Source: Scyliorhinus canicula (Eukaryota). Taken from it: a stretch of 64,000 nucleotides of DNA. The position numbers and the translations under genes were made by a program. The DNA is taken from assembly GCF_902713615.1 (NCBI RefSeq), contig NC_052174.1, positions 12,022,514 through 12,086,513 on the forward strand. Direction: 5' to 3'. Every line of letters begins with the position of its first letter. The first letter of the stretch is position 1. The notes under the pieces were generated by a model that made no database searches, was not told where the DNA came from, and worked only from the letters and a program-made list of their open reading frames with translations. Shown here piece after piece: positions 36,016 to 59,444 of the stretch.

Positions 36016-36171
36016 ATGGCCGAGGAGAAGAAACTGAAGATCAGTAACACGCTGCTTCCCACAGAGTCCATGAAAGTCATCGCTGAATCCACAGGAATCT
36101 CCCAGCTCTCCGAGGAAACGTGCCAAAGCTTGACCGAGGAAGTGAGCTACAGGATCAAGGAGCTGGCACAG
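36016..36171 (+). CDS. TAF6: TAF6 coding exon 1 (exon starts at 35995)
   Basis: Acceptor ccctgcag| at 35994; ATG 36016 in strong context (AGCATGG); donor CAG|GTAAGC. Confidence 0.95.
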
Positions 36172-37959
36172 GTAAGCGTGCGTTGTACGCAGCAGCACAC
36201 TTCTGTGTTTGCACGCAGCCCCCTGCCTGCTTTGAATTTAGGCGCAGTCCTGCATCTGTGTCCTGTGTATCGACACACACAGTCTGTGTTTACAAACAGA
36301 CCAGTGTGGGTGTTGTCTGTATTTATGTGATCCGTATGTCTGTGTCACCAGTATTTATCCAGGGCCCTGTGTGTGTCTCTACTGTATTTTTGTGTAGTTC
36401 CATCCTGCTTCCTTTGTGCGTGGCCCTCTATACCGGCCCTGCATTTACGAGTACACCCCCCCCTCCCGCCCGTGCCTACCCTGCGTTTACACACGGTCTT
36501 TGCATGCAATCCCACGCCACGGCCTGCTGCTGTGCTTTCTGACTTCTGCCTCGTATCTTCCTGGCCTCCGCTTTGGGCAGGAGGCCACCGACTGACTGTC
36601 CAGCCCATAGTTGGAGACCGCCCCTCCAGCCGGATATTGTGTTCGTCTCCTTTGCGGGGCGCGTGCAAACCGCTTTGCCTGCCTCTTCGGATGAATGTTA
36701 AAGCTGTGCTGGGGAGGAAGCAGGGTTGGTGCTCTGGGAGGGTGAGGTGAATGACATGAAAGAACCTTCCGAGCCCCATTAAAGTATCATTTTAAACTAG
36801 CGCGACTTGTGTCTCTCCTCCCACAGGATGCTTTGAAGTACATGCACCATGGAAAGCGGAAGAAGCTGACGACAGTCGATATCGATTGTGCCCTGAAGCT
36901 GAAAAATGTTGAGGTGTGCCTGTCTCTCTCAATCGTTTCCTTCTGTTTTAACCTTTGTAGTTCAACACGATGGGAGAAAGAGGATGTTAAGAAGTTGGCC
37001 AGTAGTTATCCGGCTTTAGGTTTTAATCTGCGGGGTGCGGCTCGACACGCAATAGTCTACAAGCTTGGTGCGATGCTGAAGGAGGCCATTCGGCCTATCA
37101 TGTCTCTGCCTGCTCTTTGATAGAGCTTTCCAATTAGCCCCACCCCCCACTGCTCTTTTCCCACCCTTCTTTAGTTAAATTTTTTGCCCGTTGAGTATTT
37201 ATTCCATTCCCCGTTTGAATGTGTTACTATTAGAATCGTAGAATTTACAGTGCAGAAGGAGGCCATTCGGCCCCTCTAGTCTGCAGCGACCCTTGGAAAG
37301 CGGACCCTACCTCACCTCCACCCTATCCCAGTAACCCCACCTAACATTTTTTGGACGCGAGGGGCAATTTAGCCCGGCCAATCCACCTAACCCGCACGTC
37401 TTTGGACTGTGGGAGGAAACCGGAGCACCCGGAGGAAACCCACGCACACACGGGGAGAACGTGCAGACTCCGCACAGACAGTGACCCAAGCCGAGAATCG
37501 AACCTGGGACCCTGGCGCTGTGAAGCATTGGTAATAACCACTGTGCTACCGTGCCGCCCGCTCAGATGACATCTTCCAGATCACAATGTGCTAAATTAAT
37601 ATCGTTAACGAAAGCAATTCTCATCTCTGCCTTCCCCACCTTGGTTCTGTTGCCAGTTCTCTTCAACCCGTGCCCCTATTCACTGACCCTCCTGCCAGTG
37701 GAAGCAATTTATCCTTATTTATTCAATGTGCACCCTTCATGATTTTGCTCAGCTCCATTGAATCTTGCCTTGACCTCCTCTGCTCTAAGGAGAAGCATCC
37801 TGGCTTCTCTAGCCCCTCCACACGGGCTGTCGTCTCTCCTGCCCATTTGAGTTGGTGAAGCAGAGGTGTTTAATGAAGGAAGTTACGGGTGGGGTGGAGC
37901 GGCTGGGTTTACGGTAAGGGATTTTGTGGGGGCCCTGTTTGTTAACCGCTGCCCTCTCG

Positions 37960-37994
<35 letters not shown>

Positions 37995-40900: not shown

Positions 40901-43900
40901 CAGGGTCGAGGGAAATGCCGATTCAGGGGAACCACAGATTTGAGCCAGGGAAGTGGGCCGGAAATGGGAGGAGAAGGGGATTAAGACACTAAAAGATTTG
41001 TTTCTTGGGGGTCGGTTTGCAGGATTGAAGGAGCTGGAAGCGAAGTATGGGCTGGAGCAGGGGGAAATATTTAGATACATGCAGGCTCGAGATTTTGCCA
41101 GAAAGGAGATACAGGGCTTCCCGGTGGAGCTGGCCTCCACATTGCTGGAGGAGGTGCTGACAACAGGGGGACTGGAGAAGGGGGTAGTGTCAGCGGTTTA
41201 CGGAGCTATTTTGGAAGAGGATAAGGCACCACTGGAAGGGATCAAAGTAAAGTGGGAGGAAGAGTTGGGAGAGGGAATGGAGGAGGGGTTCTGGTGTGAG
41301 ATGCTCCGGAGAGTGAATGCCTCCACCTCGTGGCGGGGGGACCTGCTGGAATTGACTCTTGAGAAGGTTATAAGTTTGAACTAAGGGGAAGGATGGAGGG
41401 GTTGTACAGTTCATGGGCGTTATTCGTTGGGCACTTTCAAGAATTGGATAACATCGAACATTAGTGGGAGAAGGGCTGGGGGGGGGGGGGGGGGGGGACT
41501 GTGTGTGTTAATGGTGACTATGGGTGATTCCTGATTCCTTTTTTTCATTTGTTTATGTTAACATGCGGGCTAATGTCTGGGGGTTTGGTGGGAGGATGGG
41601 ATTGTTGTTGATATTGACATTGCTCGTCACTGTTTATTGTTGGTGGGTGCAAATTTGGGAGAAAATGTGAAAAAGGAGGAGAAAAATATATTTTTTTTAA
41701 AAAAGGAATGCTGACTCCCAAGTGTGAATGTAAAAACGCAAGCGTAACCGGGTGTAATCGTCTCTCCTTTTGCTTTTCAGCCCACTGGCTCAGTATCGAA
41801 GGAGTGCAGCCTGCAATTCCAGAGAATCCACCCCCAGGTAAGGCGAACGTCGGTGTCGTCTCTCTCTGACAGAAATACTTGTATCTGTAGGTAAAATCGG
41901 CAGGAGAGTCCGTTCGGCCGGTAGGGTCTGCTACACCATTGAAGACCGCCACGTCCGATCATCTTCCTCAAGTCCATTTCCCCCGTCCTATTCCTCTAAT
42001 CTCCGAAAATCTGGTGGTCTCAGCCTTGAGTGTAGCACCCAGAACTCCCTGGGGTAGAGAGTTCCGAGGGCACTGGAATTGACTGGAGAAAGTTCTCCTT
42101 GTCTCGGTGCCAAATGGCGGACTCGGACCGCCTATCCTGAGACCGTGACCCTGCGTTCTAAACTCTCGAGTCAGGGAAAGTCTCAATCAAATCCATTAAG
42201 ACATTGATGTGAGGAAATGCTTAATACAGTTGTGTAATCGACCAGTCTTTGATTTTAAGGCTATGGCACGTTGTAGAGGAATTAATTTCTATCTATCTAC
42301 CCTATCGAATCTCTTAATCGTCTTGAGCCCCTAAATTAGATCACCCCTTAATATTTTGTACGCAAGTGAAGACACGCTTCAATGCCTCGTAGTTGATGCT
42401 GCCAAGTTCTGGTATCATTCAGCTGGTATCTTCTCTGCAACTTCCCCAAGACTAATTATTCTTCGCGGCGCAGATGCTGTTTAGCACACTGGGCTAAATC
42501 GCTGGCTTTGAAAGCAGGCCAGCAGCACGGTTCGATTCCCGTAACAGCCTCCCCGAACAGGCGCCGGAATGTGGCGACTAGGGGCTTTTCACAGTAACTT
42601 CATTGAAGCCTACTCGTGACAATAAGCCATTTTCATTTCATTTCAAATGTAAAGCCACTCAGAGTAGGGTCTGGCCAGAGCCCCTCTACAACTGCAGCCG
42701 TAGCAGTTAATGAGTTTTCCCTTGTCCCGGAATTGCTAACTCGGCGCGCGAGTCCGCTTAAGTCCATCAGGAAAGGCTCCTTCCTTATTTACCATTCCTC
42801 GAATGCTCTCAAAACTAGCTCGGTTCCCACCGCTGCCTCCGTGTTAACAGAGTTCCTGATCTTCGGACTGTGAGCTCCTAATTGTGTTTGTGTTTTCCAT
42901 TCTCCTCCTCCCCCATCTCAGCGCCTAAAGAGCAGCAGAAGGTCGAATCTACCGAGCCTCTGAAGGTCATCAAACCGGGGCAAGAGGAAGAAGGGCAAGC
43001 AAAGGGCAAAGGTCAAGGGTCTGCGGCCACGGATGGCAAAGGTCAGGAACCCGTGCCTGAGCAATGCGATTCTGTCGAAGTGTGAGAATGAATGCAAACT
43101 GTTGAGATTTGATCTGGGAAGAGTGCAAAGTTTTTTAAAAAGGCACAGAAGGAGGCCATTCGGGCCTATTGTGTCCATACTAGGCAAGAAACAGTGATCA
43201 TAACTGTACCCAGTACTCTAGCCGCGGTCTAACTCGTGTTTTATAAAGTGATAGAGAACCAATGAATTTGACTGTCCTAAAGTTAACTTTTGGGGAGAAA
43301 ATCTATAAATTGTTAATCTTATCTAAATGACATTGACGATCGATTTCTCCCCCTCCATTTAATTTTGGCCTCGCTTCTGTCACTTTTACATGAATCAGTT
43401 TTTTTAAAAAAATAGCCTGGCTCGGGATTTAAGCTGGTCTACTAATTTGTCTAATGTGCTCTTGAGAGCTGTTGCCAAGCCTGGCGTGTTTTGCCTGCCT
43501 CTAGTTGCCACGAGAAGGTGGCGTCTTTTATTGTCTAATGATCCCTGCCCTCCAGCCAATTACAGGCATTCCCTCTTGAGTGTTGAAGAGTCTGCAGTAA
43601 AACCTGCTGACTAATTGTAGGAAGCAACGAAACTAGGAGTGGGGGGAAGTTATATTGATTATCTCTCTCTGTCCTGTCCTCTGCCCCATCTCTTTTCTTT
43701 TCCCCAACACACTTGATCTTACTGTCTCTCCATTCCCTCCCCCCTCTCTTTCTCTCACAGCATCTCCCTCTACTCCCCCCTCTCGCCCCCCCAACCATGT
43801 GTGCTCGTTCTCTCGTACACTCTCTGATGTGTTCTGTAATATTCTCGCGTGCTGAGTCTCATGCGCGCTCTGATGTGTTCTAATATTCTAGTGTGCTTGC

Positions 43901-46900
43901 TCTCGTGCGCTGTCTGATGTGTTCTGTAATATTCTCCCGTGCTCGCGCTCTCGTGCTTTCTGTGTTCTGTAATATTCTCCCGTGCTTGCTTTCTCGTGCT
44001 TTCTGTGTTCTGTAATATTCTCCCGTGCTCGCTCTCTCGTGCGCTCTCTGATGTGTTCTGTAATATTCTCGCATGTTCGTCTCTATCTGTTCGTCTCTCC
44101 CGTCCGCTCTCTGATGTGTTCTGTAATATTCTCGCGTGCTTGCTCTCTCGTGCTTTCTGTGTTCTGTAATATTCTCCCGTGCTTGCTCTCTCGTGCGCTC
44201 TCTGATGCGTTCTGTAGTATTCTCCCGTGCTCGCTCTCTCGTGCTTTCTGTGTTCTGTAATATTCTCGCATGTTCGTCTCTATCTGTTCGTCTCTCCCGT
44301 CCGCTCTCTGATGTGTTCTGTAATATTCTCGCGTGCTTGCTCTCTCGTGCTTTCTGTGTTCTGTAATATTCTCCCGTGCTTGCTCTCTCGTGCGCTCTCT
44401 GATGCGTTCCGTAATATTCTCGTGTGCTTGCTCTCTCGTGCTTTCTGTGTTCTGTAATATTCTCCCGTGCTTGCTCTCTCGTGCTTTCTGTGTTCTGTAA
44501 TATTCTCCCGTGCTCGCTCTCTCGTGCGCTCTCTGATGTGTTCTGTAATATTCTCGCATGTTCGTCTCTATCTGTTCGTCTCTCCCGTCCGCTCTCTGAT
44601 GTGTTCTATTATATTCTCGTGTGCTCGCTCTCTCGTGCGCTCTCTGATGTGTTCTGTAATATTCTCCCGTGCTTGCTCTCTCGTGCGCTCTCTGATGTGT
44701 TCTGTAATATTCTCCCGTGCTTGCTCTCTCGTGCTTTCTGTGTTCTGTAATATTCTCTCGTGCTTTCTGTGTTCTGTAATATTCTCGCATGTTCGGCTCT
44801 ATCTGTTCGTCTCTCCCGTCCGCTCTCTGATGCGTTCTGTAATATTCTCCCGTGCTTGCTTTCTCGTGCTTTCTGTGTTCTGTAATATTCTCCCGTGCTC
44901 GCTCTCTCGTGCGCTCTCTGATGTGTTCTGTAATATTCTCGCATGTTCGTCTCTATCTGTTCGTCTCTCCCGTCCGCTCTCTGATGTGTTCTATTATATT
45001 CTCGTGTGCTCGCTCTCTCGTGCTTTCTGTGTTCTGTAATATTCTCCCGTGCTTGCTCTCTCGTGCGCTCTCTGATGCGTTCTGTAATATTCTCCCGTGC
45101 TCGCTCTCTCGTGCTTTCTGTGTTCTGTAATATTCTCGCATGTTCGTCTCTATCTGTTCGTCTCTCCCGTCCGCTCTCTGATGTGTTCTGTAATATTCTC
45201 CCGTGCTTGCTCTCTCGTGCTTTCTGTGTTCTGTAATATTCTCCCGTGCTCGCTCTCTCGTGCTTTCTGTGTTCTGTAATATTCTCCCGTGCTTGCTTTC
45301 TCGTGCTTTCTGTGTTCTGTAATATTCTCCCGTGCTCGCTCTCTCGTGCGCTCTCTGATGTGTTCTGTAATATTCTCGCATGTTCGTCTCTATCTGTTCG
45401 TCTCTCCCGTCTGCTCTCTGATGTGTTCTGTAATATTCTCGCGTGCTTGCTCTCTCGTGCTTTCTGTGTTCTGTAATATTCTCCCGTGCTTGCTCTCTCG
45501 TGCGCTCTCTGATGCGTTCTGTAATATTCTCCCGTGCTCGCTCTCTCGTGCTTTCTGTGTTCTGTAATATTCTCGCATGTTCGTCTCTATCTGTTCGTCT
45601 CTCCCGTCCGCTCTCTGATGTGTTCTGTAATATTCTCGCGTGCTTGCTCTCTCGTGCTTTCTGTGTCCTGTAATATTCTCCCGTGATTGCTCTCTCGTGC
45701 GCTCTCTGATGCGTTCTGTAATATTCTCCCGTGCTTGCTCTCTCGTGCGCTCTCTGATGCGTTCTGTAATATTCTCCCGTGCTCGCTCTCTCGTGCTTTC
45801 TGTGTTCTGTAATATTCTCGCATGTTCGGCTCTATCTGTTCGTCTCTCCCGTCCGCTCTCTGATGTGTTCTGTAATATTCTCCCGTGCTTGCTCTCTCGT
45901 GCGCTCTCTGATGCGTTCTGTAATATTCTCCCGTGCTTGCTCTCTCGTGCTTTCTGTGTTCTGTAATATTCTCCCGTGCTCGCTCTCTCGTGCTTTCTGT
46001 GTTCTGTAATATTCTCGCATGTTCGGCTCTATCTGTTCGTCTCTCCCGTCCGCTCTCTGATGTGTTCTATTATATTCTCGTGTGCTCGCTCTCTCGTGCG
46101 CTCTCTGATGTGTTCTGTAATATTCTCCCGTGCTTGCTCTCTCGTGCGCTCTCTGATGTGTTCTGTAATATTCTCCCGTGCTTGCTCTCTCGTGCTTTCT
46201 GTGTTCTGTAATATTCTCCCGTGCTCGCTCTCTCGTGCTTTCTGTGTTCTGTAATATTCTCGCATGTTCGGCTCTATCTGTTCGTCTCTCCCGTCCGCTC
46301 TCTGATGCGTTCTGTAATATTCTCCCGTGCTTGCTTTCTCGTGCTTTCTGTGTTCTGTAATATTCTCCCGTGCTCGCTCTCTCGTGCGCTCTCTGATGTG
46401 TTCTGTAATATTCTCGCATGTTCGTCTCTATCTGTTCGTCTCTCCCGTCCGCTCTCTGATGTGTTCTATTATATTCTCGTGTGCTCGCTCTCTCGTGCTT
46501 TCTGTGTTCTGTAATATTCTCGTGTGCTCGCTCTCTCGTGCTTTCTGTGTTCTGTAATATTCTCCCGTGCTTGCTTTCTCGTGCTTTCTGTGTTCTGTAA
46601 TATTCTCCCGTGCTCGCTCTCTCGTGCGCTCTCTGATGTGTTCTGTAATATTCTCGCATGTTCGTCTCTATCTGTTCGTCTCTCCCGTCTGCTCTCTGAT
46701 GTGTTCTGTAATATTCTCGCGTGCTTGCTCTCTCGTGCTTTCTGTGTTCTGTAATATTCTCCCGTGCTTGCTCTCTCGTGCGCTCTCTGATGCGTTCTGT
46801 AATATTCTCCCGTGCTCGCTCTCTCGTGCTTTCTGTGTTCTGTAATATTCTCGCATGTTCGTCTCTATCTGTTCGTCTCTCCCGTCCGCTCTCTGATGTG

Positions 46901-49900
46901 TTCTGTAATATTCTCGCGTGCTTGCTCTCTCGTGCTTTCTGTGTCCTGTAATATTCTCCCGTGATTGCTCTCTCGTGCGCTCTCTGATGCGTTCTGTAAT
47001 ATTCTCCCGTGCTTGCTCTCTCGTGCGCTCTCTGATGCGTTCTGTAATATTTTCCCGTGCTCGCTCTCTCGTGCTTTCTGTGTTCTGTAATATTCTCGCA
47101 TGTTCGGCTCTATCTGTTCGTCTCTCCCGTCCGCTCTCTGATGTGTTCTGTAATATTCTCCCGTGCTTGCTCTCTCGTGCGCTCTCTGATGCGTTCTGTA
47201 ATATTCTCCCGTGCTTGCTCTCTCGTGCTTTCTGTGTTCTGTAATATTCTCCCGTGCTCGCTCTCTCGTGCGCTCTCTGATGTGTTCTGTAATATTCTCG
47301 CATGTTCGTCTCTATCTGTTCGTCTCTCCCGTCCGCTCTCTGATGTGTTCTATTATATTCTCGTGTGCTCGCTCTCTCGTGCGCTCTCTGATGTGTTCTG
47401 TAATATTCTCCCGTGCTCGCTCTCGCGTGCGCTCTCTGATGTGTTCTGTACTATTCTCGCGTTTTGCCTCTCTCGTCCGCTCCCTGATGTGCTTGCCATG
47501 TAATCACGTTTCCCCCCCATCTCTCCTCCTCTCCAGGTAAAGATAAAAAGAAGTCTCTGCTGGACGGGGCAATACTGAAACTGAAGCCAAGGACCACGCA
47601 CGAGCTCTCCGTCGAGCAACAGCTCTATTACAAGGAGATCACCGAGGCTTGCGTCGGATCCTGCGAGGCCAAGAGAGCAGTAAGATCTTTTCAAAACGGA
47701 AAAAAAACCTTTGTGTCTTACAGAGAAGTCTCTTCTGTTAGCCATAATCTCAAGGGTGACCGCTTTCCTCATTACCTCTCACAGGAGGCTCTTCAAAGCA
47801 TTGCCACTGACCCGGGCTTGTACCAGATGCTGCCCAGATTCAGCACTTTCATATCTGAAGGGGTAAGACGCGTAACATTAGCTCTCGATCATGCACTTGC
47901 ATGCTTTCTGTCTTTCCGCCTCTCGCTCGTCATTTGCTCGCCCCCTTCCCTGCCGGGACTCGTCCCTTAGAATCCCTACAGTGCAGAAGGAGGCCCATCG
48001 AGTCTGCACTGACCCTCCAAAAGAGCACCGTACCTCGGCCCACTCCCCCCCCCCCCCCCGTCCTATCCCCATAATCCCACATCTTTGGCCTGTGGGAGGA
48101 AACCGGAGCTCCCGGAGGAAACCCGCGCAAACGCGAGGAGAGTAGGGCAGCATGGTGGCACAGTGGTTAGCACTGCTGCCTCGCAGGGCTGAGGACCCGG
48201 GGTTCGATCCCCGCCCCGGGGTCACTGTCTGTGTGGGGTTTGCACATTCTCCCCGTGCCTGTGTGGGTCTCACCCCCACAAACCCAAAAAGATGCGCAGG
48301 ATCGGCCGCGCTAAATTGCCTTTTAATTGGAAAACAAATGAATTGGGTACTCTAAATTTAAAAAAAAAGACACGGGGCAAGCGTGCGTACTCCACACCAG
48401 ACAGATGCCCAATGCCGGAATCTAACCCGGGTCCCTGGCGCTGTGAGACAGTTGCGTCGAGTGCCGTCCCCGCACCTCGCGGCCTTCTCTCTGTCAAATT
48501 GCCCAGTGCAACTTGTAACCTACGTTTTCCTGAGAAGGGTGCCCTGACGGAGCTCTTTAATATTATGCAATGGTTTGATGGGGTCGATGTAGAGAATATG
48601 TCTGCGCTTGTGTGTGGGGCCATCGACAGAAGGCAGCAATTAACAAATCACAAGTCATGAGGTGTAGAACCGATCACGGGGAATGGTTGAGAATAGCATT
48701 GAGGCATTGTAGTTGCTGGCTGGAATCACCCAGAGTATTTCCCTGTTTGTGTTCCCTCAGGTGCGTGTCAACGTGGTACAGAATAACCTGGCTCTGCTGA
48801 TTTACCTGATGCGGATGGTGAAAGCATTGATGGACAACCCTACGCTCTACCTGGAAAAATACGTGAGTGCTGCCTGGAGTGGAACTTGGGCAAGCGCAAA
48901 TTGCATTTTGCAATACCAAGGGGCTGGTTTAGCACAGTGAGCTAAACAGCTGGCTTGTCATGCAGAACAATGCCAGCAGCGCGGGTTCGATTCCCGTACC
49001 AGCCTCCCCGAACAGGCGCCGGAATGTGGCGACCGGAGGCTTTTCACAGTAACTTCATTGAAGCCTACTCGTGACAATAAGCGATTATTGTTATTTATAC
49101 ATCACCTGTCGCATAGCAACATATTTCTCAGGAACGGTTAGCAAGAAGCGTTTGACGCTGACCTGAGGAGCAGATGTTAGGGGCAGGTGACCAAAAGGTC
49201 CGTCCACGACAGAAGATTTAACGGGTGTCGTTAGAGCAATGCAGAGAGTGATGAATGTAGGAATTTCAAGATGGGTTAACGGTCAGGGTTGGAGTCAGTG
49301 TGTGACTGCTGCAGTAATGGTTTTAAAAACCCTGATTTGAGAGACAGCCAGGTGCAATTAAAACATTGTAAAAGTGAAATCATCATTCATTCCAACCACG
49401 TATACCTGAAGTTGGGCTAATGGAATTTTGTTTATATAAAGAAGATTCCCTGGGGTGTTGATAATTGGAGACATTAGTGTTTATCTTTAGTAAGATGATG
49501 CAGTTAGTGGGAGGAGCCAGAGACTGAAGCCGTCAAGTGTTGAGTTTCAGTTCAGTTTTAATTGGGGATGTGAAACAGCTTTTCGCCAAATGCTGGGAAG
49601 TGTAAAAACAGTAGTTTGACACAGGCATGAAACTGCAAGCAGATTCCTTAAGGATCACTCTCTCGATGTGGTTTATCCAAGGCATCTCTGTACAGCCAGT
49701 ATTCTTGGGTTGGCTAACTGTATTTAAAAGTGGATTTTGACCAGAGGTGGGTTTTGCTGGAGTGGAGATAAAATATAACAGTTGGGCGTTAGTGTTTCAT
49801 TTTCATTGTTAAGCACTGCGTAGTGGGTAATTGTAAGCTGTTTTCTTCTATGATAAAGTTAGCAATAAAGTTTGTTTTCATAGAATTTACAGTGCAGAAG

Positions 49901-51393
49901 GAGGCCATTCGGCCCATCGAGACTGCACCCGCTCTGGGAAAGAGCACCCGACCCAACCGTACACCTCCACCCTATTCCCGTAACCCAGCAACCCCACCCA
50001 ACACTAAGGGCAATTTTGATCACTAAGGGGCAATTTATCATGTCCAGTCCACCTAACCTGCACATCTTTGGACTGTGGGAGGAAGCCGGAGCACCCGGAG
50101 GAAACCCACGCACACACGGGGAGGACGTGCAGACTCCGCACAGACAGTGACCCAAGCCGGGAATCGATCCTGGGACCCTGGAGCTGTGAAGCAATTGTGC
50201 TATCCACAATGCTACCGTGCTGCCCTTTTAATGCACCATATCCCTACGCCTCTCAGTCTTACAGATTAAATACAATATTGGGGTTTCTGTACAGTATCCA
50301 AAGTTCTGGGATAGAATTCCAGAGCTTAGAGCCCAGAGAGTTGGAAGCCATAGCTGTTAATGGGGGAGTGATTAAAATCATGTCCATGCAAAAGGCCAGA
50401 ATCAGAATCAGAATTGGAGGGTTGTAGGCCTGGAGGAGGTGACAGAGATGTGGAGGGGTGAGACCATTTGTGGGGCTGGGGAGGGGGTAAACGTGAATCG
50501 TTCTCTTTTTCCAGTAAGCGTTGCCTTGGAATAGTCGCCAATCTCTCTGTTCCCCTTGCTCCGCAGCTGCACGAACTGATCCCCGCGGTGGTGACGTGCA
50601 TCGTGAGCCGGCAGCTCTGCCTCCGCCCGGACGTGGACAACCACTGGGCCCTGCGCGACTTTGCCGCCCGCCTCATGGCGCAGATCTGCAAGAACTTCAG
50701 CACCACAACCAACAACATCCAGTCCCGCATCACCAAAACCTTCACCAAGGTAAGGGATCAAGGCCCTGCGGCCGCCGTCTTCACCTCTTCCCCTTAACCC
50801 CCCCCCCATATTGACCTTGAATGGTCAGTTGTGACCTTCGTTCTGACCTGTGACCTCAGGAGGTCGCTTCTGAAGAGGTCAAAGTGAAAGGTGCTCTTGC
50901 TGGCCACCGGAGCACTTGCTGAGCAGGAAGGATCCTCATTTAGTTTGTTTAACCAAATTCCTGTGTGCTGTCACCGATTTTCGATCACATTTGGAGCACA
51001 GACGAGAGGTTTGTTGCTCCACCTCGAGTCTATCGTGCTCTCGTAAGAGGACAAGACTTAAAATTTACCTGCACAGTTCCAGAATTTTTAACGTGTTATT
51101 ACTGAAGACTTGTTTCTCATTTATTTTGGAAAATGTAAGTCTGGAGCATCTTAATTAAACCCTCACCGGCTTCAAGAATTTGCATTTATACGCCCTCCTT
51201 CAATGCAAAACATCCCAAAGTGTTAACAGACAGAACTCTGATACCGCGTCACATGAGCTATTAGGACGGGTGACCGAAAGCTGAGTTAAAGAGGTAGTTT
51301 TTAAGGAGTGTCTTAAGAGGAGGGCGGAGAGGTTTAAGGAGGGAATTCCTGAGCTTAGGGGCCCGGGCAGCTGGAGACTCGGCCACCAATAGT

Positions 51394-51436
<43 letters not shown>

Positions 51437-54400
51437 AAAGGTAATGTGCAAGAGATCACAGGCCAAGGAATACAGAGATCTCGGAGGGTTGTGGGGCTGG
51501 GGGGGGTAATTGCAGAGGTAGGGAGGGGGCAAGACCACGGAGGGGTTTGAAAACGAGGGTGAGGAGTTGAAAATCCAGGTGAAGCCGGATCGAGGTGTTG
51601 CGAGGACAGTGGATGAAGCGTTAACGGGGCGTGTTTTGGGGTTTGAATACAGGGCTGCACAGCTTTGAACCAATCCCAAGTTCCTAGAGGGTGCGGGCTG
51701 GCAGTGCGGCCAGGAGAACGCTGGAAGGGTGGACATTTAGAGGCCGCAGTGGCACAGAAGAGGGTTTCAGTGGCAAATAGGGTGAGGCCGCAGCCAATAT
51801 TAGAGTGGTGGAACCAGGCGGTCTTCGATTCCGAGGATGTTGGCTCGATTGCTCAGCTTGAGGTCACAGAGGAGGCTGGGGTGGCAAGCGGTCAGCTTCA
51901 GCCCCCAATAGTGGCCAGGGAGGGAGAGAATCGGTGGCTAGGGTTACGGAGCTTGTGACGGGTACTAAAGGCAATGTCTTCCCTCTTCCTGAGGCTAAAA
52001 CAGAGAAAGCTTTAGTGCAGCCCTGGATGTTAGAGCAGAATGCCAGAGGTAGTAGTGGTGAGTTAGAGCTGGTTCATCCGCGTCCATTTGGGTCCTCTCC
52101 GGTCTTGAAGCTCATCTTAATGTCCCGCCATTGACCCAGATCAGATTTGGCATGACTCAGACCTTTAAAACGTATGGCCTGATTTTGATAGACTTTACCC
52201 CGTCCTGTCCTCCGCTGAGCTAGATTATTGTTGACCAAATCTCCAGGGCTACTTCAGCAGCTCAATGCATTCAGCTCTCTCTCGCGATGTATAATTAGGC
52301 CTCGCTCTTTGTTACAATTTCAGAGTTGGTTGGACGACAAGACTCCCTGGACGACAAGGTACGGCTGCATCGCAGGATTGGCTGAGTTAGGCCACGATGT
52401 GAGTGTCCCTTGAAAGTATTTAATGTACCTTCCCGGAGCGATGTTGATGCAGAGCCTGGGGAGCATAATTCTTTTTGACAGCAGAACCCCGACGCGTAGG
52501 CCGGTACAGATTTATATCTGCAACCAGCGGCCCTCTAGTCTCCTCAAAGTTTCGTTGTCTCCACGAAGCACCTCACTCCTAAAGCGGCTTCGCTGTGTGA
52601 GACGCTTTAATAAATTTGGAACAGGTAACATGCTCAAAGTGTCAGTCGGTTTTTGCATTCCCTTTTTGCAAACCTGAAGTTATTTTAGTTTTTTATCTCC
52701 TCCCCTCTGTCCCATTCGATATAAAACATAAGGACTAGGGGCAGGAGTCGGCCATCTTTTGGGGAGAATGCTGGGAGGTGGAGTTAAAATGCCCATCAGC
52801 CATGATTGAATGGCGGAGTGGACTCGATGGGCCGAATGGCCTTACTTCCACTCCTATGTCTTATGGTCTTATCTGGCCCCTCGAGCCTGCTCCGCCATTC
52901 AATGAGATCATGGCTGATCTTTTGTGGACTCAGCTCCACTTTCCGGCCCGAACACCATAACCCTTAATCCCTTTATTCTTCAAAAAGCTATCTATCTTTA
53001 CCTTAAAAACATGTAATGAAGGAGCCTCAACTGCTTCACTGGGCAAGGGTATCCATATATTCACAACCCTTTGGGTGAAAAAGTTCCTCCTAAACTCAGT
53101 CCTAAATCTACTTCCCCTTATTTTGAGGCTATGCCCCCTAGTTCTGCTTTCACCCGCCAGTGGAAACAACCTGCCCGCATCTATCCTATCTATTCCCTTC
53201 ATAATTTTAAATGTTTCTATAAGATACCCCTGCATCCTTCTAAATTCCAATGAGTACAGTCCCAGTCTACTCAACCTCTCCTCGTAATCCAACCCCCTCA
53301 ACTCTGGGAATAACCTAGTGAATCTCCTCTGCACAGCCTCCAGCGCCAGTACGTCCTTTCTCGGGTAAGGAGACCAAAATTGAACACAATACTCCAGGTG
53401 TGGCCTCACTAACACCTTATACAATTGCAGCATAACCTCCCTAGTCTTAAACTCCATCCCTCTAGCAATTTAAGACAAATTCCATTTGCCTTCTTAATCA
53501 CCTGTTGCACCTGTAAACCAACTTCCTGTGACTCATGCACTAGCACACCCAGGTCTCTCTGCACAGCAGCATGTTTCAATATTTTATCATTTAAATAATA
53601 ATCCCTTTTGCTGTTATTCCCACCAAAATGGATATCCTCACATTTGTCAACATTGTATTCCATCTGCCAGACCCTAGCTCATTCACTTAACCTATCCAAA
53701 TCCCTCTGCAGACTTCTGGTCATAATGGGTCTGAAATGTCATTCGTTCCCCATTCATGGGATGTGGGCGCCACTGGCAACGCCAGTATTGCTTTCTCTGT
53801 TACCTAATTGCCACTTGAGAAGGTGGTGGGTTAGCCGCTGCAGTCCCTGTAGTGTAGGTACATCCCCAGTGCTGTTAGGGAGGCTGTTCCAGGATTTTGA
53901 TCCAGAGACAGTGAAGCAATGGCCGATTATATTTCCAAGTCTCTCAGATATTCATAGAATTTACAGTGCAGAAGGAGGCCATTCGGCCCATCGAGTCTGC
54001 ACCGGCTCTTGGAAAGAGCACCCTACCCAAGCCCGCACCCCCACCCTATCCCCATAACCCAGTAACCCCACCCAACACTAAGGGCAATTTTGGACACTAA
54101 GGGCAATTTATCACGGCCAATCCACCCTAACCTGCACATCTTTGGGCTGTGGGAGGAAACCGGAGCACTCGGACCCACGCACACACGGGACGAACGTGCA
54201 GATTCCGCAGAGTGACCCGAGCTGGGAATCGAAACTGGGCGACGGGGCCCCTGGGGGGCGAGGAGGGAGCTCGCAGACGAGGGGTGGCGCGTCTGCTGCC
54301 CTCGTCCTCCTTGGCGGTGGGGGGGGAGGGGGGGGGGCTTGACGAGTTGCCGAAGTGCGTGTTGCAGTTGGTGCGCGTAGTACAAACCGCAGAGAGTCTG

Positions 54401-57400
54401 TCCGTGCACAGAGCTCACATTAACCAAGTCCCATTGATCGACAGGTGATCAAGACTCTGATTATTCAGAGGCTGCAGATAGAAGGAGAACGAATCCGAAC
54501 TGTGCTGGATGGCCCTGTCGTCAGTAACATCGACAAGATTGGAGCAGATCACGTGCAGAGTTTACTGCTGGTAGGTGACCTGTGGAATAAATTACAGAGC
54601 TTGACTTTAACCCGGGGTGGGGGGTGGGGGGCTTTATGTGACATGGTGAGGAGATGGGTGCAAAATGTTCAAATTCATCAGGCTCCATCAAATCTTGTAG
54701 TACTGAAGGAGGCCATTTGACCCATCGACCTGGTGATGACTCTTTGAAAGGAGCAGTCAGATTTCCCCATAGCCCTGAATTCACTTCTTTTTGACATATT
54801 TGCCCAATTCCCTTTTGAAAGTGCCGATTGAATCTGCTTCCCACGGTGCCTTCCAGGCCGCTCCCTAGAATAAATTTTCCTCCATCTCCTCTCTGCCTCT
54901 TTTGCTGGTGTTTTTCAGTCTGTGGCCCCCCCGCCGGCTACTGACCTTCCTGTCCTTTCACTGGAAACCGTTTCAAACCAAATCGAAACGCCTCGATTAA
55001 ACCTCCCCTTAACCCGTCTCTGCCCCGAGGAGAACAGTCCCAGCTTCTCCCGTCTGTCTCTCTCGGTGACTGATGTCCCTCTTCACCAGTCGGGTCCAGT
55101 TCCTCTTGGCACCTTCTCCACGGCCTTGACCAGGCTCCTGGTGGCCAGAACGGGCCACAGTCGCCCCCCTGAGGGATGATTCCGAAAAGAGCTTAAGGTT
55201 AAGAAGATCGAATATTTCGGCCCGGTTACACCCCGTGCCAACACTTTGCAAGGACTGTTCCCCCCCCCCCCCCTCCGCCTTCTCGTCTCCGCAGCCGTGC
55301 AAGTATTTCCTTTCCCACGTGAACACCATTCCCTTTTTGAACCGTGCTTTTGGAGCTCCCTCGGCCACCCTTTAAGGTTTCATCCCGTTTGATTTGTTTT
55401 TGCTCCTCCAGAAACATTGTGCGCCGGTGGTGGCGAAGATCCGCTCCATTCCCGACAATCAGGAGTGCTACAAGACAGACTATGGGTACCTGGGGCCCAT
55501 GCTGTGTACCCATGTGGTGAAAGCCCGCGCGCAGGCTGCCATGCAGGCCCAGCAGGTGAACAGGACCACGCTGACCATCACGCAGGTGAGAAAGTGCAGC
55601 AACCGTGCCTTGCATTTAGCCAGCGCCTTCTGACATCAAGAAGAAAATGTTCCCCGAGCCGCCAGGCAGGCTGCCTGGCCTTGGAGGAAGGACAGCTTTC
55701 GCTTCTCTGCTTCTTTTCCTAACCATGGGCTCTTTTCAAAGTGCTGCAGAGCCATTGAGATGCTTTCTTGAAGTGTGCTCCGTGTACTTCCCACTGGGGC
55801 CCAGTGGGTGGCGCACACGCTCCTCTTGAGCCCGAAGGTTTCTGGGTTCAAGCCTCGTCCCAGACACTTGAGCACCCCCGGTGCAGTACTGAGGGCGCGT
55901 GCTCAGTTGAGACAGTAAACCGAGGCGCCATCTACCTGTTCGGGCAGGTGTGGAATATCCCTTGGCGCCACTTCGCAGGGGAGCTCTCCCGGCGACCTGG
56001 CCGATACTTGTCCCTCAAATCAAAATCGCAAAAAAAAAAATAAAACCCCAGATGATCTGGGTCACTATTGCATTGCTGTTTGTGGGAGCTTGCTGTGCAC
56101 AAAATGGCGGCCACTTTCTTGCAACAGTGACTGCATTTCAGAGCGTACTTCATTGGCTGTGAAAGCTTGAGATGGGGTGGCGCGGTGGGTTAGCCCTGCT
56201 GCCTCACGGGCGCCGAGGTCCCAGGTTCGAATCCCGGCTCTGGGTCACTGTCCGTGTGGAGTTTGCACATTCTCCCCGTGTCTGCGTGGGTTTCGCCCCC
56301 ACGACCCAAAGAGGTGTAGGTGGATTGGCCAGGCTAAATTGCCCCTTAATTGGAAAAAATGAATTGGGTACTCTAAATTTATTTTTAAAAAGTGAAAGCT
56401 TGAGATGTCCGATGTTTGTGAAAAGCGCTGTCTCAATGCAGGCTGTCTTGGTAATGGGAGATAAAGAACGACATTGGGGGAGGGGGGGTGGGGGGGGGAG
56501 AGATGGTGACATAACGGTCATGTCGCTGGACTAATAATCCAGAGGACCGCCTAATGCTCTGTAGATCAGCGTTTGAATCTGCTGTCCTTACCCAGTCTGG
56601 CCTACCTGGTGATTCGCGATCCACAGCCATGTGTGGTTCACTCTGAACTGGCCCAGCCAGCCATTCAGTTCGATGTAAACTAGGGACGGACAACAAAGGG
56701 CTGGTTTAGCTCACTCAGCTAAATCGCTGGCTTTTCAAGCTGGCCAGCAGCACGGTTCGATTCCCGTACCAGCCTCCCCAAACAGGCGCCGGAATGTGGT
56801 GACTCGGGGCTTTTCCACAGTAACTTCATTTGAAGCCTACTCGTGGCAATAAGCGATTTTCATTTTCATTTCATTTCATTTTCAAATGCTTGCCATGCCG
56901 TGGATGCCCACGCCCCGTGAAAGAATATTTAAATACAATCTCCTTTCTGTTGTAATTGTTTGCACGTGGGCTTTGCTTAGCGAAGCCATTAAAAGGGGGG
57001 AAAGGCTGAACACTTTTGGGAGCTCCGCGAGCCAGTGTTTTCAAGGAGAGGAGAGCAGCCACTAGTATCCGTGCTGTTGTTGTTGACTTGCAGCCTCGCC
57101 CCACGTTGACGATATCGCAGTCTCCGCAGACGTCGCGGGCGCCCAGCATCATCAAGGTGCCCAGCTCCATCACGTTGCCCATGCAGACGCTGGTCACTGC
57201 CCGCCCCTCGACCCCAACCCAGCCGTCCTCACCTGCGACCAAATTCATCATGATGTCCTCGCCATCCGGCTCGTCCACCACTCAGCAGGTAAGATTGTGA
57301 AGCTGTTTGTGGAGGAGATGTTACCCATGCGCTTGGAGACCAGAGCTTGGCGGGGGGGACCATAAATATAAAATGTTCACTAATGAATGCGATGGGGGAA

Positions 57401-59444
57401 TTCAGGGGAAATCCTTTTACCCAGAGAGTGGCGGCAATATGGAACTCGCTCCCACGGGGGGTGGTTGACGTGGCTCCCAGCAGAGCTGGAGGAAGGTGGT
57501 ACTGATGGGCTAAGAAGAGGTAGGACAGGAGAAGTCTCCCGGGACGTTCGTACGCCAGCATGGACATCTGGGGCCGAATGGCCTGCCTGTGTTAGGGACA
57601 TGGGGGCAAGAGCGAGGCTGTGCAATTATTTAGACCACGGCTGGTCATAACCCTCCCCCCAAGGGGCCCCGCCGTCACAGGGTCAGAGTGTGAACAGAAA
57701 GATCCCACAAACACCATCGCACTCCTGACCAAATCAATTTTTTTTAACTGATGTTGGTCGAGGGATATATATCGACCCACCTGCTGTGGAGAACTCTCCC
57801 CTGATCTTCACTGAAATGATGCCACCAGTCCTTTTATGTCCACGTGAGAGAGAGAGCGGATGGGACTTTGGTTTAATGTCCGTTCTAGCAATGCAGCCCT
57901 CCTTCTGGTACTGCAGTGAAGTGATTGAGGAGAGTGAATCTGATGGAAGGTTCTACAATTGCTGCACGGGTGGGGGCAGCGACGGTGGTGGGGGCAACGA
58001 CGGTGATCGGACCCGCCTGATTATATGAAATTTCTGTTGTGTACGACGCTCCTGTGCATTCACTTCACGTCCGCCTGTTTTTTTTGTGTGTGTGTGTTGC
58101 AGCCCCGGCCTACGCTGACGATCTCCCAAAACCCACAGTCGTCACAGCCCTCGACCAGCCCCAGCATCTTCAAGGTGCCCAGCTCCATCACGCTGCCAAT
58201 GCAAACACTGCTCACCCGCCCGTCTACCCCAACCCAGTCCTCTCCGTCGCCGACCAACTACATCGTGATGTCCTCCAGCTCCGGCTCTTCCAGCACACAG
58301 CAGGTGAGCCAGTGGGTATATGGGATCGATAGCTGGTCTCGGCAGTGGTTACCCGATCTGCGATTTGTGTTAGAGCTCGCCCGCTGGTCCACTCGTGTCC
58401 TTCAGGGAGGGAAATCAGCCCTGTTTGCCCGGTCTGGCCTACTCCAGACTCGCGGCAACGTGGTTAACCCTTAACCGCTCCTCTGAAATGGCTGAGGCAG
58501 CCACTCCATTGCACCAATCTGCCTCGGTTGCAGCGGTCTGAAAGACGTCTCGAGGGAGAACAAATGTCTCCTTACCCAGCGGCGCCCAGATCCCATGAGA
58601 GAATTGTTTTTTTAAAAAGGTGTTATCCTGTGGTGAAAAACTCACCTCCTGACCCCCCCCCCCAAAAGCCTGTCCACCATCTACAAGGCACAAGTCAGGA
58701 GTGTGATGGAATACTCTCCACTTGCCTGGATGAGCGCAGCTCCAACACTCAAGAAGTTCGACACCATCCAGGGCAAAGCAGCCCCGCTTGATCGGCACCC
58801 CATCCACAAACATTCACTCCATCCCCCACCGACGCACAGTGGCAGCCGTGTGTACCGTCTACAAGATGCACTGTAGCAACTCGCCAAGGCTCCTTAGGCA
58901 GCACCTTCTAACCCCGGAATGTGGGGCCCTGAGTCGCCGATGAATCCAATAAAGAATTTGGGAGAAATCCCGGCGATCGGTGGGGGTGGGGGGTGGGTGG
59001 GGGGGATGGAGTGGTGCCTGGCCAGGGAAGTTGAATAACCACACGAGGGAGTGCTGCACGGTCTTTCGGATGGGTTGTGAAACAGGGGATCCCCTCTGCT
59101 CTCTCGGGTGGATGCCAACGAATTGAGCTGGAAGCCATTCCGGTTCCGTTTAATTGCTGCAACGGGATCAGAAAATGGTTACAAATGATTTTTTTTTTCT
59201 CTTTTCCCCCCCTCAGGTGATCACGCTGAGGACCGCTCCTTGCGGAACTGGTAGCACATCGCCCGTCACCACCACGGTAGCCAGTGTTCAACCGATCGTC
59301 AAGCTAGTCTCCACCTCCCAGACCGCGCCCAGCAGCACGGTGACCGGGAGCACCCAGAAGTACATTGTGGTGTCGCTTCCCTCGGCCTCCGAAAGCAAAG
59401 TCCAGCCCAGTAACAACTCCTTGCAGCAGCACTCGCCCAAGTGA
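36016..59444 (+). CDS. TAF6: TFIID subunit 6; 15 coding exons; 692 aa if both duplicated exons are included
   Basis: H4-like histone fold (MAEEKKLK...ESMKVIAES...[15 protein letters not shown]), [40 protein letters not shown]-repeat region ([14 protein letters not shown]...[10 protein letters not shown]) and an S/T/P-rich tail. All junctions are GT-AG and phase-consistent. Confidence 0.97.
36827..36913 (+). CDS. TAF6: TAF6 coding exon 2 (DALKYMHHG...KNVE)
   Basis: ccacag| ... GAG|GTGTGC; 87 nt. Confidence 0.95.
38001..38154 (+). CDS. TAF6: TAF6 coding exon 3 ([13 protein letters not shown]...VCLK)
   Basis: Poly-C tract ttacag| ... AAG|GTAAGT; 154 nt. Confidence 0.95.
38934..41703 (+). mobile_element. 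5'-truncated, frameshifted L1-clade LINE (ORF2 reverse transcriptase remnant) in a TAF6 intron
   Basis: Motifs [33 protein letters not shown] (YADD decayed to SADD), FRYLGVQ and [20 protein letters not shown] across several frames. A/T-rich tail; candidate TSD AGGAATG at 38927-38933 and 41704-41710. Confidence 0.9.
41781..41837 (+). CDS. TAF6: TAF6 coding exon 4 ([19 protein letters not shown])
   Basis: ttttcag| ... CAG|GTAAGG; 57 nt. Confidence 0.95.
42922..43041 (+). CDS. TAF6: TAF6 coding exon 5 ([15 protein letters not shown]...TDGK)
   Basis: tctcag| ... AAG|GTCAGG; 120 nt. Confidence 0.9.
43800..47490. repeat. Complex satellite of 43-, 48- and 63-nt monomers sharing the 19-nt core TGTGTTCTGTAATATTCTC
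   Basis: Three monomer types in a patchwork order, with a higher-order copy at offset 1278. Confidence 0.95.
47537..47679 (+). CDS. TAF6: TAF6 coding exon 6 (GKDKKK...[27 protein letters not shown])
   Basis: ctccag| ... GCA|GTAAGA; 143 nt. Confidence 0.93.
47785..47862 (+). CDS. TAF6: TAF6 coding exon 7 ([26 protein letters not shown])
   Basis: tcacag| ... GGG|GTAAGA; 78 nt. Confidence 0.95.
48761..48862 (+). CDS. TAF6: TAF6 coding exon 8 ([13 protein letters not shown]...YLEKY)
   Basis: cctcag| ... TAC|GTGAGT; 102 nt. Confidence 0.95.
48920..49096 (+). mobile_element. Short (~175 nt) tRNA-derived SINE of a second family
   Basis: gggctggtttagc...ggttcgattcccgtaccagcctccccgaacaggcgccggaatgtggcg...gcctactcgtgacaataagcg. 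Copies at ~24582-24762, 38213-38355 (-), 42477-42645, 56698-56885 and 63474-63650 (-). Confidence 0.85.
49880..50225 (-). mobile_element. tRNA-derived V-domain SINE
   Basis: Reverse complement of the 19652 copy. Confidence 0.88.
50567..50749 (+). CDS. TAF6: TAF6 coding exon 9 (LHELIPAVV...TKTFTK)
   Basis: ccgcag| ... AAG|GTAAGG; 183 nt. Confidence 0.95.
52324..52398 (+). CDS. TAF6: TAF6 coding exon 10 ([25 protein letters not shown])
   Basis: tttcag| ... GAT|GTGAGT; 75 nt. Confidence 0.95.
52865..53720 (-). mobile_element. CR1 LINE 3' fragment
   Basis: [20 protein letters not shown]...[14 protein letters not shown] similar fragment lies at ~62450-62870 (-). Confidence 0.9.
54445..54570 (+). 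CDS. TAF6: TAF6 coding exon 11 ([10 protein letters not shown]...HVQSLLL)
   Basis: gacag| (pyrimidine-poor acceptor) ... CTG|GTAGGT; 126 nt. Confidence 0.92.
55412..55585 (+). CDS. TAF6: TAF6 coding exon 12 (KHCAPVVAK...RTTLTITQ)
   Basis: ctccag| ... CAG|GTGAGA; 174 nt. Confidence 0.95.
55795..56450 (+). mobile_element. Old Deu-domain SINE (SacSINE1/AmnSINE1-like) interrupted by a younger SINE (56175-56391)
   Basis: cagtactgaggg...aaaccgagg...ttgctgtttgtgggagcttgctgtgc.caaaatggc.gcc...caacagtgact...tacttcattggctgt. 16-nt TSD GTGAAAGCTTGAGATG at 56159-56174 and 56392-56407. Other remnants at ~1150-1290 (-), 3665-3860 (-) and 57690-57920 (-). Confidence 0.8.
57094..57288 (+). CDS. TAF6: TAF6 coding exon 13a ([12 protein letters not shown]...SSTTQQ)
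   Basis: ttgcag| ... CAG|GTAAGA; 195 nt, phase 0-0. Confidence 0.9.
58103..58303 (+). CDS. TAF6: TAF6 coding exon 13b, a paralogous duplicate of 13a ([12 protein letters not shown]...SSSTQQ)
   Basis: ttgcag| ... CAG|GTGAGC; 201 nt, phase 0-0; open frame, ~72% aa identity to 13a. Confidence 0.85.
59217..59444 (+). CDS. TAF6: TAF6 last coding exon (VITLRTAP...[10 protein letters not shown]...QKYIVVSLP...HSPK*)
   Basis: cctcag| acceptor; TGA at 59442-59444 (true C-terminus uncertain, see findings). Confidence 0.88.

What the first reader, a model, noticed from the sequence alone, without database searches (positions are those of the whole stretch)
57094..58303. Tandemly duplicated TAF6 exon, with both copies under purifying selection
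Seen in sequence: two phase 0-0 exons (195 and 201 nt, 814 nt apart) with intact splice sites. They encode [65 protein letters not shown] and [67 protein letters not shown] (about 49 of 68 aligned positions identical by hand count). In the first 9 codons, 7 differ synonymously and none non-synonymously. Indels are codon multiples, and the flanking introns show no similarity. This indicates an old duplication with both copies maintained, not an assembly artefact. Recalled knowledge: human TAF6 has one such exon. Inference: this lineage either doubles the S/T/P-rich low-complexity tail of a core TFIID subunit or switches between 13a and 13b (mutually exclusive or cassette splicing), giving isoform-specific TFIID tails.
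Basis: partly seen in the sequence, partly recalled or inferred. Interest (0 to 1): 0.8.

Follow-up and report, generated by a model that had tools for sequence, protein, structure and literature searches.

The report
Duplicated TAF6 tail exon in sharks
Sharks and rays carry two adjacent, separately conserved copies of one exon that codes part of the flexible tail of the core transcription factor TAF6. Public gene models already splice both copies into the protein, so this is a real but ordinary and already-annotated exon duplication.

Summary
Window 57094-57288 (195 nt) and 58103-58303 (201 nt) are two phase 0-0 exons with AG/GT sites, 814 nt apart. They share 49 of 68 aligned residues, and both match human TAF6 residues 487-552.

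The window encodes, exon by exon, the 692-aa RefSeq TAF6 of Scyliorhinus canicula, which already contains both exons in tandem. The same A+B arrangement is in gene models of 16 elasmobranch species (12 sharks, 4 rays). Every other vertebrate TAF6 examined has one copy, including the two Callorhinchus entries.

B copies form one clade (support 100/98). Orthologue comparisons give pN/pS of about 0.1 for each copy separately. There is no sign of gene conversion. A decayed copy of the following exon lies between A and B in Heptranchias, so a multi-exon segment was duplicated.

Strict mutually exclusive splicing is not supported: both exons are included in most models, both lengths are multiples of three, and the intron is long. 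A-only and B-only isoforms are modelled only in two lamniform sharks.

No paper found describes the duplication. The effect on the protein is inferred, not shown: a second copy of a conserved hydrophobic motif module in the disordered tail. Interest is modest. The scan had not reported this duplication before on other DNA.

The parts
36016..59444 (+). TAF6 coding region: 15 coding exons, from the ATG at 36016 to the stop at 59442-59444.
   Evidence: All 692 residues of Scyliorhinus canicula XP_038642816 (P0167) map as exact blocks onto the window. Pfam finds TAF at 12-76 and TAF6_C at 212-395. A tblastn map with a mammalian TAF6 agrees.
55412..55585 (+). Coding exon 12. It ends ...NRTTLTITQ at a codon boundary. 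The start is approximate because of a split codon.
   Evidence: Exact match to residues 428-485 of P0167.
57094..57288 (+). Exon 13a (copy A), 65 codons, phase 0-0. This is the ancestral-type copy (SIIKVP...[24 protein letters not shown]).
   Evidence: residues 486-550. Orthologues are in Narcine, Heptranchias and Stegostoma with AG/GT sites. A-A dN/dS is 0.02-0.12.
57289..58102 (+). Intron between the two copies, 814 nt. It holds a fragment of a dispersed repeat at about 57680-57810.
   Evidence: No remnant of the following exon is detectable here, unlike in Heptranchias.
58103..58303 (+). Exon 13b (copy B), 67 codons, phase 0-0. This is the derived copy (SIFKVP...[23 protein letters not shown]).
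   Evidence: residues 551-617. The B clade has support 100/98. B-B dN/dS is 0.035-0.11 among sharks and Narcine.
59217..59444 (+). Last coding exon (VITLRT...[10 protein letters not shown]...QQHSPK, then stop). It carries the KYIVVSL motif whose human counterpart binds the ENL ET domain.
   Evidence: residues 618-692. PMC13643176.

Best explanation
This is a genuine, ancient tandem exon duplication in TAF6, found here only in sharks and rays. Most likely, in the elasmobranch stem lineage, a genomic segment holding the exon for human TAF6 residues 487-552, its downstream intron and at least the start of the next exon was duplicated in tandem (mechanism inferred). The inner copy of the next exon decayed. 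That left two symmetric phase 0-0 exons, which are normally both spliced in. The product is a 692-aa TAF6 whose disordered, S/T/P-rich C-terminal tail carries two copies of a conserved module of about 66 residues. Copy A kept the ancestral sequence. Copy B changed at a fixed set of positions soon after the duplication (II to IF, VSAR to LTR, PSPPPTKF to SSPSPTNY) and then stayed constant. Each copy has been under strong purifying selection on its own since sharks and rays split. What is shown: the anatomy, the taxonomic distribution, the selection on each copy, and the inclusion of both exons in annotated models. What is inferred: the duplication adds a second, slightly different set of short hydrophobic docking motifs (SI[IF][13 protein letters not shown] and [KN][FY]I[MV]MSS) to the TFIID tail, so that more partner proteins, or different ones, can bind.
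For: Anatomy and chance. Identity: the window encodes S. canicula TAF6 (692 aa, A+B) exactly. Distribution: A+B occur in tandem in models of 12 shark and 4 ray species. Only 6 of the first 149 TAF6 proteins collected have two copies, and all 6 are elasmobranch. A search specific for B found only elasmobranch proteins. Callorhinchus, lungfish, coelacanth, ray-finned fishes and tetrapods have one A-like copy. Genomic copies in Narcine, Heptranchias and Stegostoma all have AG/GT sites and lengths that are multiples of 3. B is monophyletic at 100/98 with a long stem of 0.29. Pooled independent orthologue pairs give pN/pS 0.108 for A (p 9e-24) and 0.092 for B (p 1e-26); pairwise values are. There is no concerted evolution: within-species A-B identity equals between-species A-B identity in every segment. 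A decayed copy of the following exon lies in the A-B intron of Heptranchias, 72% identical over 162 nt, E 6e-20, with its reading frame broken. The tail lies outside the Pfam domains and is modelled without secondary structure at pLDDT 24-35. Human TAF6 [14 protein letters not shown], encoded by the next exon, binds the ENL ET domain with Kd 3.3 uM (PMC13643176). Each of A and B carries an ITLPM h-x-h-x-h-type motif.
Against: No RNA reads were examined. Inclusion of both exons rests on automatic RefSeq/Gnomon models whose transcript support I could not inspect. Carcharodon and Cetorhinus also have modelled B-only (X2) and A-only (X3) isoforms, so inclusion may not be strictly constitutive. Synonymous divergence is near saturation (dS 0.6-1.6 over about 65 codons), so dates and exact omega values are rough. 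The Callorhinchus genome could not be searched, so an older origin followed by loss in chimaeras is not excluded; the tree leaves this unresolved (AU p 0.33). The docking-motif function is inference only. The ENL paper did not test the exon-13 motifs, and the AlphaFold model is poor overall (mean pLDDT 44).
Confidence: 0.8

Rival explanations
1. The two exons are mainly a regulated alternative-splicing device, either cassette or mutually exclusive, that gives TFIID tail isoforms specific to tissue or stage (A+B, A only, B only).
For: Both exons are symmetric (195 and 201 nt), so any combination keeps the reading frame. RefSeq models isoform X2 (B only) and X3 (A only) beside X1 (A+B) in both Carcharodon carcharias and Cetorhinus maximus. 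B has its own conserved identity.
Against: In 14 of the 16 species with A+B models, every listed protein model contains both exons. This includes S. canicula, where the accessions listed share one protein and the name carries no isoform label, and Hypanus with 8 isoforms. Nothing in the sequence enforces exclusivity: both lengths are multiples of 3, the intron is 814-4486 nt, and all sites are ordinary GT-AG. Cross-species similarity stops within about 20 nt of exons A and B. The inverted repeats flanking the exons, and the roughly 50-nt block shared after exon 12, are repeat-derived or repeat-like. The 'B-only' Rhinoraja model is caused by a 500-N assembly gap.
Confidence: 0.17
2. One copy is a dead or dying pseudo-exon that gene predictors include only because it resembles the real one.
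For: Gene models are partly built from homology. No RNA was examined here.
Against: Each copy keeps an open frame, AG/GT sites and a length that is a multiple of 3 in the four species with DNA for both copies (window, Narcine, Heptranchias, Stegostoma); the Rhinoraja locus shows copy B only. These lineages are separated by a deep shark-ray split. Each copy has pN/pS of about 0.1 by itself. In contrast, the real pseudo-exon in Heptranchias shows frameshifts and stops.
Confidence: 0.02
3. The pair is an assembly artefact or a recent duplication kept similar by gene conversion.
For: None beyond the similarity itself.
Against: The copies are 23% different in protein, with dS of about 0.8. The introns are unrelated. 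The same two copies, with the same diagnostic differences, occur in independent assemblies of 16 species. Within-species A-B identity is no higher than between-species A-B identity.
Confidence: 0.01

Closest known systems
Single exon of human and other vertebrate TAF6 coding residues 487-552 (PRPTLTLSQ...TKFIVMSS...STQQ)
   Same: Both window exons are homologous to it over their full length. They have the same position between the exon ending ...TTLTITQ and the exon starting V[IL]..., and the same phase. Copy A is close to the sequences of bony fishes and tetrapods.
   Different: All non-elasmobranch proteins examined have one copy. Elasmobranchs have two, and the second has fixed derived residues.
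Tandem exon duplications in animal genes (reviewed in PMC9013439; human substitution events in PMC9741552)
   Same: These are adjacent paralogous exons of the same phase and nearly the same length, made by local genomic duplication. About 10% of animal genes are reported to have such pairs (PMC9013439).
   Different: The classic, well-studied cases are spliced in a mutually exclusive way. Here the annotated default is inclusion of both, which lengthens a disordered tail rather than swapping a folded segment.
ENL/AF9 ET-domain binding motifs (h-x-h-x-h) in TAF6, TAF2 and SNF5 (PMC13643176)
   Same: The duplicated module holds ITLPM, and a K[FY]I[VM]MSS stretch resembling the proven human motif KYIVVSLPP of the next exon.
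   Different: Binding of the exon-13 motifs was not tested in that paper or here. ITLPM fits h-x-h-x-h only if Met counts as hydrophobic. The similarity of exon 13 to the last exon is weak (E 0.018).

Membership tests
TAF6 orthologue | N-terminal histone-fold (TAF) domain plus the TAF6_C HEAT-repeat domain, with orthology to vertebrate TAF6. | tested here: met
   Pfam PF02969 (E 2.5e-27) and PF07571 (E 1.1e-74) on P0167. The window encodes P0167 exactly. A metallo-beta-lactamase-fold ORF lies upstream and a DUF3456-domain gene lies beside TAF6 in Narcine. This is reminiscent of the mammalian neighbours MBLAC1 and CNPY4 (from memory; orthology not tested).
Tandem exon duplication | Two adjacent exons of one gene, on the same strand, with sequence similarity beyond chance. 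| tested here: met
   49 of 68 residues identical. tblastn E 3e-21. Repeat families D3 and D4.
Tandem exon duplication | Both copies keep splice sites, reading frame and phase. | tested here: met
   AG/GT sites, phase 0-0 and lengths of 195-207 nt in the four species with DNA for both copies.
Tandem exon duplication | Both copies are present in mature mRNA. | tested here: inconclusive
   Both are in RefSeq protein models of 16 species. Transcript reads could not be examined with these tools.
Mutually exclusive exon pair | Exactly one of the two exons is present in every transcript. | tested here: not met
   The main or only annotated protein has A followed by B in 16 species.
Mutually exclusive exon pair | An enforcing mechanism exists: a frame shift or NMD when both are included, steric hindrance from a very short intron, incompatible spliceosomes, or conserved competing RNA structures. 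| tested here: not met
   Both lengths are multiples of 3. The intron is 814 nt in the window and up to 4486 nt elsewhere. All sites are GT-AG. Intronic complementarities exist but involve a dispersed repeat and are not conserved.
ENL/AF9 ET-domain binding motif | An accessible h-x-h-x-h hydrophobic motif in a disordered region, with measured binding. | not testable with these tools
   The motif ITLPM is present in both copies. The region is modelled as disordered at low confidence. No binding data exist for this motif (PMC13643176 tested only residues 122-133 and 605-616).

The most novel reading that the evidence does not exclude
Elasmobranch TFIID uses the two exons as a regulated three-way switch (A+B, A only, B only). 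Copy B, frozen in a derived form since before sharks and rays split, would carry a docking motif with a different partner preference from copy A. The tail of a core general transcription factor would then be tuned by splicing in one vertebrate lineage.
Probability: 0.15. Interest if true: 0.5.

Novelty: new member of a known kind. Interest (0 to 1): 0.3.

Why it matters
TAF6 is an essential, slowly evolving core subunit of TFIID and SAGA, and the function of its conserved C-terminal tail is largely unknown. A lineage that has kept two diverged copies of one tail module under strong constraint since before sharks and rays split shows that this 'low-complexity' stretch is functional sequence. 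It also points to the residues that matter: the SI[IF][13 protein letters not shown] core and the [KN][FY]I[MV]MSS motif. The duplication is a candidate shared derived character of Elasmobranchii. Beyond that it is an ordinary tandem exon duplication that annotation pipelines already handle correctly.

Tried and rejected
1. Gene conversion or concerted evolution. Rejected: within-species A-B identity (0.66/0.78/0.75 by segment) equals between-species A-B identity (0.65/0.77/0.73), and A and B never cluster by species.

2. Competing RNA structures. The inverted repeats flanking exon A (56060-56101 with 57689-57730) and exon B (57714-57729 with 58694-58709) looked suggestive. However, the central element is a dispersed repeat with 5 copies in the Heptranchias locus and none in the matching place in the other species.

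3. Conserved intronic regulators. Cross-species blastn finds only the exons plus at most about 20 nt around A and B. The roughly 50-nt block shared by the sharks after exon 12 looks like a common shark repeat motif (the repeat identity is from memory).

4. The Rhinoraja 'B-only' protein as evidence for skipping of A. Rejected: the locus has a 500-N assembly gap just upstream of B, where the missing exons would lie.

5. Callorhinchus genome check for a hidden B copy. Not possible: the protein is not on record with a contig. Only two single-copy UniProt entries were found.

6. Genomic DNA for Carcharodon, Hypanus, Mobula and Heterodontus could not be fetched because the files are too large. The splice sites of the species with skipping isoforms therefore remain unexamined.

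7. IQ-TREE codon-model omega was run but no value was recovered from the output. I rely on Nei-Gojobori counts instead.

8. Deep repeat between exon 13 and the last exon. Only weak similarity around K[FY]I[VM] (E 0.018).

9. AlphaFold2 on a 30-sequence alignment gave a poor model (mean pLDDT 44). It supports no more than 'no confident structure in residues 477-692'.

10. Literature. No paper holds TAF6 together with 'exon duplication'. The papers holding TAF6 with 'mutually exclusive exons' or with 'shark' look unrelated by title and abstract.

Full report
**Observation**

Exon A is window 57094-57288 (195 nt), preceded by ...gacttgcag and followed by gtaaga. Exon B is 58103-58303 (201 nt), preceded by ...gtgttgcag and followed by gtgagc. 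They are 814 nt apart.

The peptides align in 68 columns with 49 invariant positions and two gaps, one of 3 codons and one of 1 codon. Similarity ends at the exon borders except for the splice consensus. A repeat search recovers the pair.

Over 64 aligned codons, 29 are identical, 20 differ only synonymously and 15 change the residue. Differences by codon position are 13/6/25. Nei-Gojobori dN is 0.145, dS 0.81 and dN/dS 0.18 (Fisher p 7e-7). The first nine codons have 7 synonymous and 0 non-synonymous differences, as claimed.

**What gene and what genome**

Both peptides match residues 487-552 of human TAF6 in PDB chain sequences (E 3.6e-14 and 6.4e-11). The human protein has only one significant stretch.

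A mammalian TAF6 maps onto the + strand from 36016 to about 59440. All 692 residues of the RefSeq protein 'transcription initiation factor TFIID subunit 6 [Scyliorhinus canicula]' (XP_038642816 and further accessions, P0167) map as exact blocks onto 15 coding exons, 36016-59441. Exon A is residues 486-550 and exon B is residues 551-617.

So the window is the small-spotted catshark TAF6 locus, or one coding the identical protein. Its public annotation already joins 12-A-B-14. The listed accessions carry one protein with no isoform label. Pfam places the histone-fold domain at 12-76 and the HEAT domain at 212-395, so A and B lie in the C-terminal tail outside any domain.

**Distribution**

A profile of A+B searched against 1.84 billion representative proteins gave 27 hits, all TAF6 tails (one sits inside a chimeric calcium-channel-like model). 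The top hit, from Narcine bancroftii, contains both copies.

Word-indexed searches and cluster look-ups gave 16 species whose models have A directly followed by B:
- Sharks (12): Carcharodon, Cetorhinus, Rhincodon, Stegostoma, Hemiscyllium, Chiloscyllium plagiosum, Scyliorhinus canicula, S. torazame, Mustelus, Heterodontus, Heptranchias, Pristiophorus.
- Rays (4): Hypanus, Hemitrygon, Mobula, Narcine.

Of the first 149 TAF6 proteins collected, only six have two copies, and all six are elasmobranch. A search specific for B returned only elasmobranch proteins. Callorhinchus milii (two UniProt entries), coelacanth, lungfish, bichir, sturgeon, gar, eel, amphibians and reptiles have one A-like copy. 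I could not reach the Callorhinchus genome, so an unannotated or lost B copy in chimaeras is not excluded.

**Is each copy maintained?**

I fetched genomic loci for Narcine (L001), Heptranchias (L002), Rhinoraja (L003) and Stegostoma (L004). In Narcine, Heptranchias and Stegostoma both exons are present with AG/GT sites and lengths of 195-207 nt, all multiples of three. The A-B intron is 1521, 4486 and 2669 nt in those species.

Selection on each copy:
- A-A orthologue comparisons give dN/dS 0.02-0.12.
- B-B comparisons give 0.035-0.11 among sharks and Narcine.
- B-B comparisons with the skate give 0.25-0.40. Its first third has diverged while the core is intact.
- Pooling two phylogenetically independent pairs gives pN/pS 0.108 for A (p 9e-24) and 0.092 for B (p 1e-26).

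These comparisons do, and both copies are constrained.

In a protein tree with ten outgroup sequences, the 13 B copies form one clade (bootstrap 100, SH-aLRT 98) on a long stem of 0.29 substitutions per site. A copies stay close to the outgroups. This indicates one duplication before the shark-ray split, a burst of change in B, then stasis.

Within-species A-B nucleotide identity equals between-species A-B identity in all three segments, so gene conversion does not explain the similarity.

**How it arose**

In Heptranchias, about 530 nt downstream of exon A, the A-B intron holds a decayed copy of the following exon with its acceptor. It is 72% identical over 162 nt (E 6e-20) and is broken by a frameshift and stops.

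The duplicated unit was therefore a genomic segment spanning exon 13, its intron and at least the 5' part of the next exon. The inner copy of the next exon died, leaving 12-A-(pseudo-exon)-B-14. No remnant is detectable in the window, Narcine or Stegostoma.

**Splicing**

Nothing in the sequence enforces mutual exclusivity. Both exons are multiples of three, the intron is long, and all sites are ordinary GT-AG.

Inverted repeats flank each exon in the window, but the shared element is a dispersed repeat. Cross-species similarity stops within about 20 nt of A and B. A roughly 50-nt block shared by the sharks after exon 12 also looks repeat-derived (the repeat identity is from memory).

Annotated isoforms lacking one exon exist only in Carcharodon and Cetorhinus: X2 is B only and X3 is A only, beside X1 with both. 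The B-only Rhinoraja model is explained by a 500-N assembly gap.

I therefore rate 'both included, tail lengthened' as the main state. Regulated cassette use is a minority possibility that only RNA data can settle.

**Likely effect on the protein (inferred)**

The module is 55-60% Ser, Thr and Pro. It is nevertheless well conserved across vertebrates, especially the [12 protein letters not shown][MV][20 protein letters not shown][FY]IVMSS core.

AlphaFold2 gives no confident structure for residues 477-692 (pLDDT 24-35), and the model is poor overall.

A 2026 study showed that the ET domain of ENL binds the human TAF6 tail peptide [14 protein letters not shown] (residues 605-616, the next exon) with Kd 3.3 uM through an h-x-h-x-h hydrophobic motif (PMC13643176). 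Exons A and B each contain ITLPM (ITLPV in a pika TAF6, P0119) and a K/N-F/Y-I-M/V-M-S-S stretch resembling KYIVVSL.

The duplication thus raises the number of such hydrophobic motifs in the tail. Copy B offers variant versions (IF for II, NY for KF) that have been fixed across elasmobranchs. Whether any of these motifs binds ENL/AF9 or another partner is untested.

**Novelty**

Tandem exon duplication is a common and well-described process (PMC9013439). This instance is already built into RefSeq models of the same species and 15 others, so it is not a discovery at the level of annotation.

I found no paper mentioning it. The points that appear undocumented are the elasmobranch-wide distribution, the independent constraint on each copy and the pseudo-exon remnant.

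Verdict: a new member of a known kind, of modest interest.

Noticed in passing
L002:23335-23488 (Heptranchias perlo, intron between exons A and B): A decayed copy of the exon that follows B, with a recognisable acceptor. It is 72% identical over 162 nt to the true exon at L002:28794-29018 and is broken by a frameshift and stops. It shows that the original duplication covered more than one exon.
   Followed up: yes
L003:13071-13570 (Rhinoraja longicauda): A 500-N assembly gap lies just upstream of exon B. The RefSeq 'TAF6-like' model XP_078283842 (416 aa) jumps from ...EGVRVNV to exon B. The missing HEAT-domain exons and exon A probably fall in this gap, so the model is an artefact and not an isoform.
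   Followed up: partly
window:57154-57186 and 58172-58204: The codons for PSI[IF]KVPSSIT are identical in A and B apart from the one codon that changes Ile to Phe. They show very few synonymous changes across all nine exon sequences from five species, while the first nine codons are riddled with synonymous changes. This may reflect a nucleotide-level constraint such as a splicing enhancer, or chance over a short stretch.
   Followed up: partly
window:36139-36177: Another first-stage note (s1-246722) flags a TAF6-delta-type alternative donor here. A gorilla TAF6 isoform (P0014) stops matching the first coding exon after the codons for ...LTEE, just before [10 protein letters not shown]. That is where such a donor would lie.
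   Followed up: no
window:2193-2852 (- strand): A 220-codon open frame with a metallo-beta-lactamase domain (PF00753, E 9e-19). It lies about 33 kb upstream of TAF6 on the opposite strand. It is probably the MBLAC1 orthologue, in line with the mammalian neighbourhood as I recall it; this was not tested. The Narcine locus has a DUF3456-domain gene next to TAF6.
   Followed up: partly
window:60734-62063: A 1.3-kb C/T-rich tandem array (period 17 or 34, about 78 copies, consensus CTCTCGTTCCCGCTCC) lies about 1.3 kb downstream of the TAF6 stop codon. It produces long spurious open frames on both strands.
   Followed up: partly
P0005 (1102 aa representative protein): A calcium-channel-like protein model with 50 residues of the TAF6 exon-13 module ([10 protein letters not shown]...TTTQQ) inserted in frame. 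The inserted stretch is identical to the sturgeon TAF6 tail (P0003). This is almost certainly a chimeric gene prediction.
   Followed up: no
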